Shown piece by piece: positions 1-7,139 of a stretch of 15,803 bases of DNA (positions within the stretch are counted from its first letter, which is position 1; every line of letters starts with the position of its first letter). Where the stretch lies: positions 1 to 15,803 of the forward strand of contig NW_021825386.1 in NCBI RefSeq assembly GCF_006345805.1, in the 5' to 3' direction. The notes under the pieces are model-generated. The model saw only the letters and a list, made by a program, of their open reading frames with translations, did not search any database and was not told the DNA's origin. The position numbers and the translations under genes are program-made. The stretch comes from Octopus sinensis. Taxonomy: Eukaryota.

Positions 1-1557
1 TGCCGGTGGCACACAAAATCCATCCGAACATGCCGTAGTCAGTACCGCTCACTGGCCATCGTGCTGTGGGCACATAACAAACACCATTCGGTCGTGGCCG
101 TTCGCCAGCTCATCTAGCACCTGTGTCGGTGGCACATAAAAACACCATCCGAAGACCCGGCAAGACTAGTCAGGCCATAAACCATGGCCCCTACCTGGGA
201 CGTAGTCAGTCCACCTGCATACCTTCCTCCTTGTGATACTTGTGAAGGCCTGTTGAGGCAAGTGAAAATCAAAATCAAAATCAAAGCAAATCAAAATAGA
301 TGAACATCAATGGAATTTGTATCTTTGTGGTACCGTGCCGGTGGCACACAAGAGAAAACCACCGAAAGTGGCTGTACCCAGTACCGCATCGACTGGCTCC
401 GTGCTGTGGGCACATAACAAACCCCATCCGATAGTGGCCGTTCGCCAACCTCATCTAGCACCAGTGTCGGTGGCACATAAAAACACCATCCGAACCGGCA
501 AGCTAGTCAGGCATAACCCATGGCCCCTACCTGGGACGTAGTCAGTCCACCTGTGCTACCTTCCTTCTGTGACACTTGTGAAGACCTGTTAGGCAAGTGT
601 GAAAATCAAAAATCAAAACAAAATAGATGAACATCAATGGAATCTGTATCTTTGTGGTACCAGTGCCGGTGGCACACAAGAGAACCATCCGAACGTGGCC
701 GTAGCCATTCCGCATCGACCGGCCTCCGTGCTGTGGGCACGTAACAAACACCATCCGATCATGCCGTTCGCCAACCTCATCTGGCACCTGTGTTGGTGGC
801 ACATAAAACACCTTCCGAAGACCCGGCAAGACTAGTCAGTCCACTGTGCATACCTTCCTCTTGTGACACTGTGGAACCGGTTGAGGCAAGTGAAAATCAA
901 AAATCAAATCAATCAAATCCAAATAGACAAAATAGATGAACATCAATGGAATTTGTATCTTGTGGTACCAGTGCCTGTGGCACACAAGAATCCATCAGTG
1001 CTGTAGGTCAGTGCGGTGGGCACATGACAAACACCATCCGATCGTGGCCGTTCGCCAGCCTCATCTAGCACCTGTGTCGGTGGCACATAAAAACACCATC
1101 CGAAGAACCCGGCAAGACTAGTCAGGCCATAACCCATGGCCCCTACCTGGGACGTAGTCAGTCCACCTGTGCATACCTTCCTTCTTGTGACACTTGTGAA
1201 GACCTGTTGAGGCAAGTGAAAATCAAAACAAATCAAAATAGATGAACATCAATGGAATTTGTATCCTTGTGGTACCAGTGCCGGTGGCACGTGGCACACA
1301 AGAAAACCATCCGAACGTGGCCGTAGCCAGTACCGCATCGACTGGCCTCCGTGCTGTGGGCACGTAACAAGCACCATCCGATCGAGGCTGTTTTGCCAGC
1401 CTCATCTGGCACCTGTGTCGGTGGCACATAAAAACACCATCCGAGCGTGGCCGTCTGCCAGCCTCGTCTGGCACCTGTGTCGGTGGCAAAAAAAAACACC
1501 ATCCGAGCGTGGCCGTTTGCCAGCCTCGTCTGGCACCTGTGTCGGTGGCACATAAAA
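1..1557 (+). repeat. Tandem array of ~290-335 bp units derived from the RTE LINE ORF end plus 3' UTR; the last unit has extra ~55-60 bp sub-repeats
   Basis: Marker AGGCAAGTG..AAAATCAAAA recurs at about 256, 591, 884 and 1210. Most units carry GAAGACCCGGCAAGAC..CCATAACCCATGGCCCCTACCTGGGA, matching the end of the minus-strand RTE ORF (KTRQDK*) and its UTR at 2180-2310. The array runs off the window start. Confidence 0.85.
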
Positions 1558-1562
1558 TCACC

Positions 1563-1743: not shown

Positions 1744-3389
1744 ATCATCATCATCATCATCGTTTAACGTCCGCTTTCCATGCTAGCATGGGCTGGACGG
1801 TTCAACTGGGGTTTGGGAAGCCAGAAGGCTGCACCAGACTCAGTCTGATCTGGCAGTGTTTCTACAGCTGGATGCCCTTCCTAACGCCAACCACTCCATG
1901 AGTGTAGTGTGTTCTTTTTACGTGCCACCAGCACAGGTGCCAGATGAGGCTGGCAAACGGCCACGAACAGATGGTGCTTTTTACTTGCCACCGGCACAGG
2001 GGCTAGAAGAGGCTGGCCACGGCCCCAATCGGATGGTGCATTTTACATGCCACCGGCATGGAGGCTAGTCGGGGGGGGGGGGGGCGCTGGCAACAGCCAC
2101 GTTCAGATGGTTCTCTTACATGCCACTGGCACTGGTATCACAACTACAATTTCCATTTATGTTGATTGATTTTGATTTTCACTTGCCTCAACAGGTCCTC
2201 ACAAGTAGAGTTTTGTGTCCCAAGAAGGAAAGATATGCATAAGTGGACTGGCAACATCCCAGGTAGAGGCCACGGGTTATGGTCTCACTTGTCCTGCCGG
2301 GTCTTCTCATGCACAGCATACTTCCAAAGGTCCCGGTCACTAGTCATTTCCTCGGTGAGACCTAATGTTCGAAGGTTGTGCTTCACCACCTCATCCCAGG
2401 TTTTCCTGGGTCTACCTCTTCCACAGGTTCCCTCAACCGCTAGGGTGTGGCACTTTTTCACACAACTATCTTCATCCATTCTTGCCACATGACCATACCA
2501 GTGCAAATGTCTCTCTTGCACACCACAACTGATGCTGCTTAGGTCCAACTTTTCTCTCAAGGTACTTACACTCTGTCGAGTATGAACACTGACATTACAC
2601 ATCCATTGGAGCATACTGGCTTCATTTCTTGCGAGCTTACACATATCCTCAGCAGTCACAGCTCATGTTTCACTACCATGTAGCATGGCTGTACGTACAC
2701 ATGCATCATACAGTTTGCCTTTTACTCTGAGCGAGAGGCCTTTTGTCACCAGCAGATGTAAGAGCTCTCTGAACTTTGCCCAGGCTATTCTTACTCTAGC
2801 AGTTACACTTTCAGCACACTCGCCCCCGCTACTGACTTGGTCACCTAGGTAACGGAAGCTATCAACTATTTCTAGTTTTTCTCCCTGGAATGTGGCGGAA
2901 GTTGGTCTCTGTGCATTTTCAGTGTTTATTGCTCCTGAGCATCTGCCACAGATAAAAACTATTTTCCTAGTTAGTCTTCCTTTGACATTACTACATCTCT
3001 TATGTGTCCATAGCTTACACTTGATGCATCTTATAGAGTTTCTACCTACGCCTTTTTTACAGATCGAGCAGGGCCATCTAGCTGAAGGCGTTTGTGATTT
3101 GTCTACCTTCCAACTTATTAAGACTTTGGTTTTGGCTAGATTGATTCTAAGGCCCTTTGATTCTAAACCTTGCTTCCACACCTGAAACTTCCCCTCCAGT
3201 TCTGATAGAGACTCAGCAATTACAGCAAGGTCATCAGCATAGAGGAGCTCCCAGGGGCATCTTGTCTTGAATTCCTCCGTTATTGCCTGGAGGACTATGA
3301 TAAATAGGAGGGGACTGAGGACTGAACCTTGGTGGACCCCAACCTCTACCCGGAATTCTTCACTGTACTCGATGCCAACCCTCACCTTA
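1744..3389 (-). mobile_element. 5'-truncated RTE-clade non-LTR retrotransposon (RT C-terminal half, 3' UTR, (GAT)n tail)
   Basis: RT motifs GVHQGSVLSPLLF and LLYADDL, RTE-type C-terminal WYGHVARM and GRGRPRKTW, then UTR and microsatellite tail. Homology starts abruptly at about 3389. Confidence 0.92.
2285..3388 (-). pseudogene. RTE reverse transcriptase remnant with one in-frame nonsense codon
   Basis: ORFs 2663-3421 and 2285-2659 share a frame. They are separated by TGA at 2663-2665 (GSET*AVTAED), where Trp is expected. Confidence 0.9.
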
Positions 3390-3639
3390 ATAAATGTTGT
3401 TATCGTACACTGCCTGTGCAAGAAGATTTTTTTTTAAAGTGAGGAAAGGCTGTGCACTGAGTCAATCCCACTCACTAAGCAACAGCAGCCATAATCCGAA
3501 AAGAAGAACAAGTCAACATCATCGGTAACCACTGTGTCGCAGGTTTTATGTGGGAGTTATCCCAGTTACCTGAATTACCTTCTCCTAGAAGGATACCCTA
3601 ACAATGGCTAGAAGTCCTTCACTCCCAATGGTTTAACTG

Positions 3640-3891: not shown

Positions 3892-4166
3892 CATACATAC
3901 ATAATTGCATACATACATACATACACACATACATACACACACATACATACATACATACACGCATACATACACACACACATACATACATACACATACATAC
4001 ACACATACATACATACACACATACATACATACACACACATACATACACACACACATACATACATACATACATACACATACATACACATACATACATACAT
4101 ACATACACACACATACATACACACACATACATACACACACATACACACATACATACATACACACAT

Positions 4167-4197
<31 letters not shown>

Positions 4198-4679
4198 TAC
4201 ACACATACATACACACATACATACATACATACATACATACACACACATACATACATACATACATACACACATACACACATACATACATACACACACATAC
4301 ATACACACATACATACATACACACATACATACACACATACATACATACATACCTACATACATACACACATACATACATACATACATACATACATACATAC
4401 ATACATACATACATACATACATACATACATACACATATACATACATACATACATACACCATTTACACACATACATACATACAAACATACATACATACATA
4501 CATACATACACATACATACATACATACATACATACATACCTACATACATACATACATACATACATACATACACATACATACATACATACATACATACATA
4601 CACACATACATACATACCTACCTACATACATACATACATACATACATACCTACATACATACACACATACATACATACAT

Positions 4680-4731
<52 letters not shown>

Positions 4732-5416
4732 ACATACATACATACATACATACATACATACATACATACATACACGCATACATACCTACATACATACATA
4801 CATACATACATACCTACATACATACATACATACATACATACCTACATACATACATACATACATACATACATACATACATACATACATACATACATACATA
4901 CTACATACATACATACATACATATACATACATACCTACATACATACCTACTACATACATACATACATACATACATACATAACATACATACATCACATACA
5001 TACATACCTACATACATACATACATACATACATACATACATACATACACACATACATACATACATACACACATACATACACGCATACATGCATACATACA
5101 TACAATACATGCATACACATACATACATACATACATACGATACATACATACATACATACATACATACATACATACATACACACACACACACCATACATAC
5201 ATACACACATACATCACACATACATACATACATACATACATACATACCTACATACAATACATACACATACATACATACTACCTACATACATACATACACA
5301 TACACACATACATACACACAATACATACATACATACATACATACTACTAATACATACATACATACATACACATAACATACATACATGCATGCATACACAC
5401 ACACATACACACATAC

Positions 5417-5451
<35 letters not shown>

Positions 5452-5476
5452 TACATACATACATACATACATACAT
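3892..5476. repeat. ~1.6 kb compound (TACA)n/(CA)n microsatellite
   Basis: Direct inspection. It generates the spurious YVCM/HTYI ORFs. Confidence 0.99.
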
Positions 5477-5499
5477 AAACAACATCGATATGCGTATAA

Positions 5500-5731
5500 A
5501 AAATAGAAAAGAAAGCGGACATTCATGAAACATTGATAAGGTGTTTGCAAATCCAGTCCCCAAGTTACACTTTCAGCTTTGTATTATTGGAGCAAGAGGA
5601 TGTGTACCGACCAGTCTGGAGTGAATTTTGGCTGAACTGGAAATCTTAAAGAGAGAATGTAAATCTTTCTTTCAGACCCATTATCCGGAACTATAAAATT
5701 TGTAAGACATTTGTATGATTACAAACGATGA
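5500..5731 (+). pseudogene. Degenerate C-terminal fragment of an RLE-type (R4/Dong-like) non-LTR retrotransposon
   Basis: Across frameshifts and stops it reads KIEKKADIHETLIRCLQ / LCIIGARGCVPTSLE*ILAELEI / LSGTIKFVRHL. This resembles the IIGAxG and LxGTxKIxRxxL terminal motifs of RLE LINEs. Confidence 0.5.
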
Positions 5732-5786
5732 TTAACAAAGCAAGAGGCTTTCCCTCACAAACTAGCTTCCAAACAGATGATTTATA

Positions 5787-5940
5787 GGCGCAGGCGTGGC
5801 TTTCCAACCACATGGTTCCGAGTTCAGTCCCACTGCGTGGCATGTTCGGCAAGTGTCTACTACTATAGCCTACTACTATAGCCTTACAAAGTCTTGTAAG
5901 TGGATTTGCTAGATGGAAACGGGGCGAAGACCATCGTATA
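5787..5940 (+). mobile_element. tRNA-derived SINE, 5' part
   Basis: GGCGCAGGCGTGGC...CCACATGGTTCCGAGTTCAGTCCCACTGCGTGGCA...GGATTTGCTAGATGGAAAC is homologous to the copy at 10273. Confidence 0.85.
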
Positions 5941-6174
5941 CATCTACATATCTATGTGTGTCTATCTTTCTAACCCAAAATTCGCATGCGCTTGCTTTAT
6001 TAAATTTAAAACTGAAGATCGGTTACAGCGAGAAAATTGTTTCTAGTTCATTCTTCACGTGTAAACGGTAAGTTGAAATAATATTCAGTCTCTTTTCCTC
6101 TCAGGATCTCTTTCTTCTTCACATTCAATTTCTCCAACTGAACCATAATTGTCTTCCCATCTCGATGAGACTAG

Positions 6175-6906
6175 TCAATTTTTGTAAATTTGGGTATCTC
6201 TTCGACCAATAAATTTACGTAGAAGTATACTGGAGTTAGGCTGAGCATGAAGAACCATAGCCATACCGTTATAACTATGTTGAGGAAATGCTTTGTTTGG
6301 ATTTTCACCGAAAGGAGCTGGTGCCATATCCCATCGTTGTGAACCTCTAACGATCGTATTAGGATATGGGTTAGGGTCACCTTCATCATTACTTTTATCG
6401 TGTGTAATCCAAGTCCATCTTGGACGATAGGAAACTTTAACTCTTCTGTTTTCTCTTAATATGTTAAATATTTCTGAGTCATCTATATGTTTGCCTTGAA
6501 TATCTCGATCGTAAGTGTAATATAGTCTTGGGATAATTGCACCAGCTTTTTGTTTTTTATATACTTCAAATACATATCGGAAACGTAGAACCTGCCACTG
6601 ATCGAATAGCGTTCTCCATATGTTAGCTTTTACATTCTCAATTGAATCATTCATTTGTGCCCATGTACATGATATTGTCATAGGAGTTTTTTCATCTTTA
6701 ATTTTTAGTTGTTCCACTTTAAAAAAAGATTGAACTGATGATTGTCTAACACGGGGGGGGGGGTAGAGGATAAATAGTGTATCTTCCATTACGGCGACGA
6801 CGATACTGCCGACGGCGTCGATAACGTCTCCGATTACGTAATACATTCCTCTTCCTAAAAAACTCTTTCGCCTGCCTATAATGCGTGGGCGTCTCCTGTA
6901 CAGCAT
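6175..6906 (-). CDS. CRESS-DNA virus (circovirus-like) capsid protein, probable endogenous viral element, 243 aa
   Basis: Basic start MLYRRRPRIIGRRK, then LFDQWQVLRFRYVF (cf. LFDQYRI), PRLYYTYDRD (cf. PxxYYxxDxD), RVKVSYRPR, RWD and PQHSYNG (cf. WxD...PHYG). Order and spacing are those of circo-like jelly-roll capsids. By-eye recognition only. Confidence 0.75.
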   Translation of the reverse strand: MLYRRRPRIIGRRKSFLGRGMYYVIGDVIDAVGSIVVAVMEDTLFILYPPPRVRQSSVQSFFKVEQLKIKDEKTPMTISCTWAQMNDSIENVKANIWRTLFDQWQVLRFRYVFEVYKKQKAGAIIPRLYYTYDRDIQGKHIDDSEIFNILRENRRVKVSYRPRWTWITHDKSNDEGDPNPYPNTIVRGSQRWDMAPAPFGENPNKAFPQHSYNGMAMVLHAQPNSSILLRKFIGRRDTQIYKN

Positions 6907-6964
6907 AATGCTGACTGACGACTGCTAGGATGTTGCAGGCTATTACGTCATAGGCAGCAGGCAT
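6746..6964 (-). CDS. Overlapping frame carrying the capsid-type arginine-rich arm (RKRNVLRNRRRYRRRRQYRRRRNGR)
   Basis: From the ORF track. The Arg-rich block lies between the A6 run at 6857-6862 and the G11 run at 6753-6763. Probably part of the capsid gene rather than an independent CDS. Confidence 0.5.
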   Translation of the reverse strand: MPAAYDVIACNILAVVSQHYAVQETPTHYRQAKEFFRKRNVLRNRRRYRRRRQYRRRRNGRYTIYPLPPPPC

Positions 6965-7081
6965 TCTATGCGGCGGTAGCGCTGCTGCTGATTAATGCTG
7001 CTATTTATTTCAGGCACTGTTTCTTTGTCATCTTGAAATTCAAATGCAGGTCTTTCTTTCGAACCTGATATACATAAGTGG

Positions 7082-7139
<58 letters not shown>
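7082..7139. repeat. (TA)n microsatellite
   Basis: Direct inspection. Confidence 0.98.

What the first reader, a model, noticed from the sequence alone, without database searches (positions are those of the whole stretch)
5968..7080. Probable endogenous CRESS-DNA virus capsid with an intact 243-codon frame in a mollusc-like genome
Seen: a stop-free 243-aa minus-strand ORF with a basic N-terminus and ordered LFDQW, YYTYDRD, VKVSYRPR, RWD and HSYNG motifs. It sits in about 1.1 kb of non-repeat sequence between a SINE and a (TA)n tract. The other coding relics here carry stops or frameshifts or are short fragments. Known: these motifs typify Circoviridae/CRESS capsids, and CRESS EVEs are mostly reported as Rep fragments. 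Inference: a recent insertion or a retained (co-opted) capsid from an uncharacterised virus lineage. Whether it is already described cannot be judged here.
Basis: partly seen in the sequence, partly recalled or inferred. Interest (0 to 1): 0.85.

Follow-up and report, generated by a model that had tools for sequence, protein, structure and literature searches.

The report
Endogenous CRESS-virus capsid gene relic
This is a fossil of a small circular single-stranded-DNA virus, consisting of its capsid gene and a decayed replication origin, inserted in a repeat-rich and probably cephalopod genome; it comes from a virus lineage with no named relatives and looks like a fairly young dead insertion, not a working host gene.

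Summary
The 243-codon minus-strand ORF (6175..6906) is real and not chance: 0 of 2000 shuffles reach that length.

The window ORF has no hit in Pfam, PHROGs or the PDB, and two AlphaFold runs failed (pLDDT 34-36). So neither motifs, profiles nor fold show it to be a circovirus capsid.

Genomic linkage does identify it:
- Its few relatives come from an octopus metatranscriptome, one unidentified sequencing project and one 2.47-kb NCBI contig labelled Erwinia amylovora.
- In these, the same gene lies opposite a CRESS Rep (PF02407, E=2.8e-18; PDB circovirus Reps, E~1e-14).
- The circovirus-type origin nonamer sits in a stem-loop between the two genes.
- The intact relative's 262-aa protein has an in-frame arginine-rich arm and a sub-threshold Circo_capsid match (E=1.4e-6).

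The window holds only part of the virus, about 6035..6996: a degenerate origin stem, the capsid gene and a conserved post-stop segment. There is no Rep.

The "intact" frame hides two compensating frameshifts that put the arginine-rich arm out of frame, plus two in-frame deletions. There are no stops.

Copies differ with dN/dS 0.1-0.3 at saturated synonymous sites, so they diverged as viruses and integrated independently.

Verdict: a young, probably non-functional, cap-derived CRESS endogenous viral element. It is a new member of a known kind. Co-option is not supported.

The parts
6175..6906 (-). Capsid (cap)-derived gene. It is an open 243-codon frame, but broken relative to intact relatives: 2 compensating frameshifts, 2 in-frame deletions (7 and 5 codons), 0 stops, 0 insertions.
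   Evidence: ORF. Family relatives. Frame comparison with L001, L002, L016 and L017. Deletions seen in alignments A1 and A6. Not chance.
6953..6990 (-). Degenerate relic of the replication-origin stem-loop. The outer stem is kept; the loop nonamer is not recognisable.
   Evidence: Aligned with the stem-loops of L005, L008 and L001, which carry the nonamer. No match to the relatives' 11-mer within 3 mismatches in this region. The fold is not better than shuffles (z = -1.2).
6907..6952 (-). 5' leader between the origin relic and the cap start codon, conserved with L001.
   Evidence: DNA alignments A1 and A7.
6058..6174 (-). Conserved segment just after the cap stop codon, of unknown role. It reads as a conserved peptide in the cap frame, and is shared with L001 and L016.
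   Evidence: About 70% nucleotide identity with L001 in 30-column blocks. tblastn E=6.6e-6 (L001) and 2.6e-4 (L016). Translations. Third-position excess of mismatches is not significant (4, 7, 11).
6035..6996 (-). Whole virus-derived element (approximate bounds): origin relic, cap and 3' segment. No Rep.
   Evidence: The extent of homology with L001 and L005 ends near these coordinates. tblastn with Rep pieces and with the intact Rep finds nothing in the window.
5691..5870 (.). Neighbour: short interspersed repeat (SINE-like). Its core is repeated elsewhere in the window and in L016.
   Evidence: blastn. No tRNA or Rfam match.
7089..7139 (.). Neighbour: (TA)n microsatellite bounding the element's upstream side.
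   Evidence: Tandem Repeats Finder.

Best explanation
A partial genome of a CRESS-DNA virus entered the germline of the host, probably a cephalopod, by illegitimate recombination. The virus belongs to phylum Cressdnaviricota and is circovirus/cyclovirus-like, but of an unclassified lineage. What remains is a pseudogenised endogenous viral element of about 960 bp: a decayed origin stem-loop, the capsid gene and a short conserved 3' segment. In the virus, this gene would have encoded a capsid protein of about 250-260 aa. By analogy with Circoviridae, its arginine-rich N-terminal arm binds the ssDNA genome and its body forms the shell; this was not shown here. In the window the gene has no Rep partner and no recognisable origin nonamer. 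Two compensating frameshifts put its arm out of frame, and two short in-frame deletions affect the body. The long open frame is best read as a sign of youth (little neutral decay since insertion), not of function. Shown: homology family, Rep and origin linkage in relatives, break counts, absence of Rep. Inferred: capsid fold and function, germline status, mode and age of integration, lack of present function.
For: 1) Only about a dozen proteins among billions are related. All are short fragments except one.
2) In L005-7 and L008-13 the cap-like frame lies head-to-head with Rep relics. Pfam PF02407 hits L008 at E=8.2e-6, 26.4 bits against a cut-off of 26. tblastn with the intact Rep gives E=6e-44 and 4e-55.
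3) L017 is a 2467-bp NCBI contig labelled Erwinia amylovora. It has an unbroken 262-aa homologue with an in-frame basic arm. Its unbroken Rep hits PF02407 at E=2.8e-18 and PDB circovirus Rep nuclease domains at E~1e-14, and it has HUH and P-loop motifs.
4) The L017 cap protein hits Pfam Circo_capsid below threshold: E=2.7e-5 at 25 bits, and E=1.4e-6 at 29.3 bits for residues 23-262, spanning profile positions 1-199 of 224.
5) The nonamer TAGTATTAC, given as the Circoviridae origin motif in PMC5656780, occurs exactly once, upstream of cap, in 12 relative loci. In L002 it sits in a stem-loop with z = -3.9.
6) dN/dS between the window body and relatives is 0.12-0.29, with synonymous differences saturated (pS 0.59-0.86). 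The copies therefore diverged under protein-level selection, as viruses, and integrated separately.
7) Relatives are visibly broken: L001 has 2 frame changes and 2 stops; L002/3 has 1 frame change; L008-13 has 1 frame change and 4 stops; L016 has 7 stops. They sit next to host-type repeats: a Tc1/mariner HTH relic in L001 and the SINE core in L016.
8) The window flanks are host-like: an RT relic, microsatellites and interspersed repeats.
9) The stop-free state is expected with probability 0.16-0.48 after 2-5% neutral divergence. The body departs from unanimous family columns no more often (3 of 28) than the intact relative does (5 of 30).
Against: No profile or structure search links the window ORF itself to any known capsid. 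The Circo_capsid hit of the relative is below Pfam's cut-off (36.2 bits) and disappears when the basic arm is trimmed off. Both structure predictions failed, so the jelly-roll fold is untested. Every indel in the window copy leaves the frame open, through two compensating shifts and two in-frame deletions; this is mildly unexpected under pure neutrality and leaves some room for selection on the ORF. Integration rests on one assembly, and reads were not available. The host species was not identified. The frameshifts could be assembly errors.
Confidence: 0.8

Rival explanations
1. Co-opted host gene. The capsid-derived ORF, having lost its DNA-binding arm, is kept by selection, for example as a decoy subunit that interferes with assembly of related viruses. 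Alternatively the locus is kept as a template for antiviral small RNAs.
For: The 243-codon frame is open with no stops. All four indel events leave the frame open. The body is as well conserved at family-unanimous columns as the intact relative. A related locus (L001) was recovered from an octopus RNA data set, so such loci can be transcribed. The setting is transposon-rich, as in small-RNA clusters.
Against: The open frame is compatible with neutral decay of up to about 5%. The arm is lost by frameshifts and two conserved body segments are deleted. No identical or near-identical protein is on record in 15 billion sequences. No orthologue is known, and there is no expression evidence for this locus. 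All other integrated copies are plainly decaying. The low dN/dS is explained by evolution as viruses, because synonymous sites are saturated.
Confidence: 0.08
2. Not endogenous. A fragment of a free (possibly defective) virus genome, or a contaminant, was joined to host sequence by misassembly.
For: An apparently free relative (L017) turned up as a contaminant contig in a bacterial assembly. No reads were available to check the junctions.
Against: The segment lacks Rep and a usable origin and carries frameshifts. It is embedded between more than 5 kb of host-type repeats on each side of one contig. Several relatives are likewise adjacent to host repeats.
Confidence: 0.04
3. The ORF is virus-derived or transposon-derived but is not a capsid. 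It could be another protein of a Rep-encoding element (for example a movement-like or accessory protein), or a host or transposon protein that merely neighbours Rep.
For: The window ORF has no significant profile or structure match to any capsid. No fold model is available.
Against: In the intact relative it is the only other large ORF of a two-gene, roughly 2.5-kb Rep-encoding genome. It has the size, the arginine-rich arm and the position opposite Rep across the origin that are typical of CRESS capsids. The sub-threshold Circo_capsid match spans nearly the whole profile. It has no transposon or host family hit.
Confidence: 0.05

Closest known systems
Endogenous circoviral / CRESS-DNA elements (CVe) in animal genomes, including molluscs (Dennis et al. 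2018, PMC6069186)
   Same: A non-retroviral ssDNA virus fragment integrated in an animal genome. It derives from an uncharacterised invertebrate CRESS lineage, occurs as multiple copies per genome in relatives, and most copies are decayed.
   Different: That survey found only rep-derived elements in invertebrates, including four mollusc species, and no new cap-derived ones. This element is cap-derived with no Rep, and its relatives point to a cephalopod host, a group not in that list.
Family Circoviridae, genus Cyclovirus (ICTV profile, PMC5656780)
   Same: In relatives: two divergent genes (Rep and Cp), the origin nonamer at a stem-loop between their 5' ends, the nonamer on the cp-coding strand as in cycloviruses, and a Rep with an HUH nuclease that matches circovirus Rep structures.
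   Different: The intact relative is at least 2.47 kb (family range 1.7-2.1 kb). Its Rep is over 400 aa, and it has a 139-nt 3' intergenic region where cycloviruses have little or none. The capsid does not reach the Pfam Circo_capsid threshold and matches no solved circovirus capsid. The window copy itself has none of the genome-level features.
Unclassified CRESS-DNA viruses from marine invertebrates and environmental viromes
   Same: Small ambisense Rep+Cap genomes with highly divergent, arginine-rich-armed capsid proteins that usually lack detectable sequence similarity to classified families.
   Different: No relative of this capsid was found in IMG/VR viral contigs, JGI metagenomes or GTDB genomes. 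The family is known so far only from integrated fragments and one mislabelled contig.

Membership tests
Circoviridae (ICTV) | Two major ORFs, Rep and Cp, with 5' ends facing each other across the origin | tested here: not met
   The window has cap only. tblastn with Rep pieces and with the intact Rep finds nothing. The feature is met in relatives L005-7, L008-13 and L017.
Circoviridae (ICTV) | [quoted passage not shown] | tested here: not met
   The window keeps only a degenerate stem at 6953..6990, with no nonamer within 3 mismatches. The feature is met in 12 relative loci; the L002 stem-loop has z = -3.9.
Circoviridae (ICTV) | Circular ssDNA genome of 1.7-2.1 kb | tested here: not met
   The intact relative contig is 2467 bp and still lacks the Rep start. 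Circularity is not shown: there is no terminal overlap. This cannot be tested for the window fragment.
Circoviridae (ICTV) | Capsid protein homologous to circovirus Cp (Pfam PF02443) | tested here: inconclusive
   The window ORF and family members give no hit even at E<=10. The intact relative scores 25-29.3 bits, E=2.7e-5 to 1.4e-6, below the 36.2-bit cut-off, and the hit is lost when the arm is trimmed. No PDB capsid hit.
Circoviridae (ICTV) | T=1 icosahedral shell of single jelly-roll subunits | not testable with these tools
   Both AlphaFold2 runs gave pLDDT 34.4 and 35.6. A fold search on such models would be meaningless and was not run.
Cressdnaviricota (CRESS-DNA viruses) | Rep with an HUH endonuclease domain and an SF3 helicase P-loop | tested here: met
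   Met for the lineage, not for the window. L017 Rep hits PF02407 at E=2.8e-18 and PDB circovirus Reps at E~1e-14; nuclease motifs and a P-loop can be read. Rep relics occur in L005-13.
Endogenous viral element | Virus-derived sequence contiguous with host chromosomal DNA and inherited | tested here: inconclusive
   It is contiguous in the window with an RT relic, microsatellites and interspersed repeats. Reads, other individuals and orthologous loci could not be examined, and the exact protein is not on record elsewhere.
Co-opted (exapted) viral gene | Open frame maintained by purifying selection in the host lineage, and expressed | tested here: inconclusive
   The frame is open but hides 2 frameshifts and 2 deletions. 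The open state is compatible with neutrality. Low dN/dS reflects the viral phase. No orthologues or expression data were available.

The most novel reading that the evidence does not exclude
The arm-less but otherwise well-preserved capsid ORF is a domesticated gene of a cephalopod. It would be kept open by selection (all four indels preserve the frame) and would act against related CRESS viruses, either as a defective capsid subunit or, through transcription of this transposon-rich locus, as a source of antiviral small RNAs. It would be the first cap-derived CRESS co-option in a mollusc.
Probability: 0.07. Interest if true: 0.75.

Novelty: new member of a known kind. Interest (0 to 1): 0.4.

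Why it matters
CRESS-virus fossils in invertebrate genomes have been reported almost only from rep, because capsids diverge too fast to recognise (PMC6069186). Here a capsid fossil is recognised through its relatives' linkage to Rep and the origin. This defines a capsid family with no Pfam model and no named member.

The family ties together three things:
- several independent integrations in what look like cephalopod genomes;
- a transcribed relative in an octopus data set;
- one apparently complete Rep+Cap genome deposited as a contig of a bacterial assembly.

That gives a testable host assignment for an otherwise orphan CRESS lineage, and a probe set for finding cap-derived fossils that rep-based screens miss. 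The claim that would have made the finding striking, an intact and possibly co-opted capsid gene, is weakened. The frame is open, but the arginine-rich arm is out of frame, and neutrality explains the rest.

Tried and rejected
- Pfam, PHROGs and NCBIfam scans of the window ORF gave no family.
- PDB sequence and profile searches with the ORF, two family alignments and the intact relative gave only chance hits: Scm, tRNA synthetase, toluene monooxygenase and a Dpr-interacting protein, all at E>=0.07.
- AlphaFold2 was run with an 8-row and an 11-row alignment. It gave pLDDT 34.4 and 35.6, so no Foldseek search was run.
- Scans of IMG/VR, JGI metagenomes and GTDB genomes with the ORF, the intact relative and a conserved-block alignment confirmed no relative.
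- A search for a Rep relic in the window by tblastn found nothing.
- An exact look-up of the window ORF and of a neighbouring RT-relic ORF, to name the host, found neither on record.
- Paper searches for the SRR118693xx runs found nothing, so that species stays unidentified.
- The post-stop conserved segment was considered as the C-terminus of Rep on the opposite strand. This was rejected because the antisense reading matches only L001, while the sense reading also matches L016, and no similarity to any Rep tail was found.
- Host duplication as the origin of the copies was considered. It was rejected because synonymous sites are saturated while the protein is conserved.
- A Rep-nick-site end for the element was considered. 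It was rejected because sequence on both sides of the nonamer position is retained.

Full report
**Observation.**
- The ORF is not a chance product. With this composition a stop is expected every 14-15 codons, so P(243 open codons) is about 3e-8. None of 2000 shuffles of the region reaches 243 open codons (mean longest 82, maximum 189).
- The right-hand neighbour is a (TA)25 tract at 7089..7139.
- The left-hand neighbour, about 5691..5870, is a short interspersed repeat. Its core recurs twice more in the window and once in a relative's contig. Neither ARAGORN nor Rfam recognises it.
- The rest of the window is typical metazoan repeat landscape: a split reverse-transcriptase relic (RVT_1, E=6e-15), a 1.6-kb (CATA)n array, other microsatellites and 62- to 327-bp tandem repeats.

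**What direct searches say.** That is not borne out.
- The ORF hits no Pfam, PHROG or NCBIfam family, even at E<=10.
- It hits no solved structure beyond chance.
- Profiles built from its relatives also find no capsid in the PDB.
- Two AlphaFold2 runs, with 8 and 11 aligned sequences, gave mean pLDDT 34.4 and 35.6. The proposed jelly-roll test could therefore not be made, and I ran no Foldseek search on those models.

**Relatives.** The family is very small.
- An exhaustive HMMER pass over 1.84 billion representative proteins found nine hits, two of them spurious repeats.
- Word-indexed searches over 5.8 billion proteins, with the ORF, with a family profile and with the intact relative, added three more.
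- Nothing was found in IMG/VR, JGI metagenomes or GTDB genomes.
- The relatives come from three sources. One is a Logan contig of run SRR3401912, described as an octopus metatranscriptome in PMC11662614. The second is many short contigs of runs SRR11869379-94, one project whose organism I could not identify. The third is a single 2467-bp NCBI contig (L017) deposited in an assembly labelled Erwinia amylovora.

**Why it is a CRESS-virus capsid gene.** The decisive evidence is linkage.
- In L017 the homologue is an unbroken 262-aa ORF. Its first ~50 residues are an arginine/lysine-rich arm in frame with the body.
- The only other large ORF in L017, on the opposite strand, is a Rep. It hits Pfam Viral_Rep at E=2.8e-18 and PDB circovirus Rep nuclease domains at about 1e-14. 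Its nuclease motifs and a helicase P-loop can be read in the translation.
- In two further, mutually divergent groups of contigs (L005-7 and L008-13), the cap-like frame lies head-to-head with broken Rep relics. tblastn with the L017 Rep gives E=6e-44 and 4e-55. One L008 piece reaches the Pfam cut-off on its own.
- Between the two genes, on the cap-coding strand, twelve relative loci carry exactly one copy of TAGTATTAC. [quoted passage not shown] In L002 it sits in the loop of a clean hairpin (z = -3.9, 0 of 200 shuffles as stable).
- The L017 protein gives a sub-threshold match to Pfam Circo_capsid: 25 bits at E=2.7e-5, and 29.3 bits at E=1.4e-6 for residues 23-262 over profile positions 1-199 of 224. 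The cut-off is 36.2 bits. The arm alone and the body alone give nothing. I count this match as suggestive only.

**Anatomy of the window element.**
- DNA homology with L001 runs from about 6960 down to about 6035, and stops in unrelated flanks.
- Alignment with L005 and L008 extends the upstream end to about 6996.
- At 6953..6990 the outer stem of the origin hairpin survives. The loop motif does not: there is no match within three mismatches, and the fold is no better than shuffles.
- There is no trace of Rep anywhere in the window.
- Downstream of the cap stop, 6058..6174 is about 70% identical to L001. It reads, in the cap frame, as a peptide also recognisable after the cap stop of L016. Its role is unexplained.

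**State of the gene.**
- The intact relative (L017) and the near-intact L002 carry the basic arm in the same frame as the start codon and the body, and L016 joins the end of its arm to the body in one frame. In the window the start codon and the body share one frame, but the arginine-rich arm is encoded in another. The window copy therefore contains two frameshifts that cancel each other.
- It also lacks two short segments (7 and 5 codons) that every relative covering those regions has.
- It has no stops.
- Whether the frame changes are real mutations or assembly errors cannot be decided without reads.
- At columns where at least four other family members agree, the window differs at 3 of 28. 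This is no worse than the intact L017 at 5 of 30. The body is barely decayed.

**History.**
- Pairwise Nei-Gojobori comparison of in-frame pieces, as they stand, gives dN/dS of 0.12-0.29. Synonymous differences are at or near saturation (pS 0.59-0.86), both between the window and the relatives and among the relatives.
- Divergence therefore accumulated under selection on the protein, which means as replicating viruses. The copies are independent integrations, not host duplications.
- The other integrated copies are visibly dead: L001 has two frame changes and two stops; L002/3 has one frame change; L008-13 has one frame change and four stops; L016 has seven stops. They abut host-type repeats.
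- The window ORF has 110 possible stop-creating substitutions. Staying stop-free has probability 0.48, 0.33 and 0.16 after 2, 3 and 5% neutral divergence.
- A young neutral relic explains the open frame. Selection is not needed, although all four indels leaving the frame open keeps a small probability for it.

**Comparison with known families.**
- The lineage works like a circovirus or cyclovirus: Rep and Cp diverge from a nonamer-bearing hairpin, with the nonamer on the cp strand as in Cyclovirus.
- It fails family criteria, however. The intact relative is at least 2.47 kb against a family range of 1.7-2.1 kb. Its Rep exceeds 400 aa. It has a 139-nt 3' intergenic region. Its capsid does not reach the Circo_capsid threshold.
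- It is best called an unclassified Cressdnaviricota lineage.
- As an endogenous element it belongs to a known kind. Dennis et al. 2018 found CRESS-derived elements in four mollusc genomes, but all were from rep and none from cap (PMC6069186). My paper searches found no report of cephalopod CRESS elements; this is a limited search, not proof of absence.

**Verdict.** The element is a real, cap-derived CRESS endogenous viral element. It is young, probably non-functional, and comes from an orphan virus lineage. It is a new member of a known kind. "Intact" needs qualifying, and co-option is unsupported. Interest is moderate (0.4).

I did not build or search a frame-corrected capsid, and I did not close or print the 2.47-kb relative as a genome.

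Noticed in passing
L017 (NCBI JBFBPM010000001.1, assembly GCA_044652805.1), whole 2467-bp contig: A contig deposited under Erwinia amylovora carries an unbroken CRESS Rep and an unbroken capsid homologue. It is almost certainly a small eukaryotic ssDNA virus genome contaminating a bacterial assembly. The annotated 'hypothetical protein' starts at an internal Met of the 262-aa capsid ORF. The Rep reading frame runs into a poly-G stretch at the contig end and has no start codon.
   Followed up: partly
window 6058..6174 (-); L001 about 850..960; L016 about 808..864: A segment directly after the capsid stop codon is conserved in three copies. In the capsid's own frame it reads as a conserved acidic peptide of about 25-30 residues. 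It could be a readthrough extension, a small extra ORF or a constrained 3' non-coding signal. The codon-position pattern of mismatches is not significant.
   Followed up: partly
L001 1001..1352 (-): The octopus metatranscriptome contig with the closest relative also carries a Tc1/mariner-type transposase relic (HTH_Tnp_Tc3_2, E=3.7e-9). A repeat-rich locus containing a capsid relic therefore appears in RNA data.
   Followed up: no
L002 894..902 and flanks; L002 1..890: Like the window, L002 has origin plus capsid but no detectable Rep upstream of a well-preserved origin hairpin. Two independent integrations may thus share an 'origin-capsid only' architecture.
   Followed up: no
window 3892..5477: A 1.6-kb imperfect (CATA)n microsatellite (406 copies, 85% matches) with extreme strand asymmetry (GC skew about -1). 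It generates all the long low-complexity 'ORFs' in both strands.
   Followed up: no
window 1..843, 1359..1562, 1914..2058: Tandem arrays with periods of 327 bp and 62-63 bp (83-89% matches) in the GC-richer left end of the window. They are satellite-like or derive from a repeated element, and were not identified.
   Followed up: no
window 2285..3421 (-): A retrotransposon relic split into two ORFs. It has the C-terminal part of an RVT_1 reverse transcriptase followed by a PHD/C1-like zinc-finger (PHD, E=1.5e-4).
   Followed up: partly
window 5857..5884: A perfect 13-bp tandem duplication (2.2 copies) lies between the interspersed repeat and the virus-derived segment.
   Followed up: no
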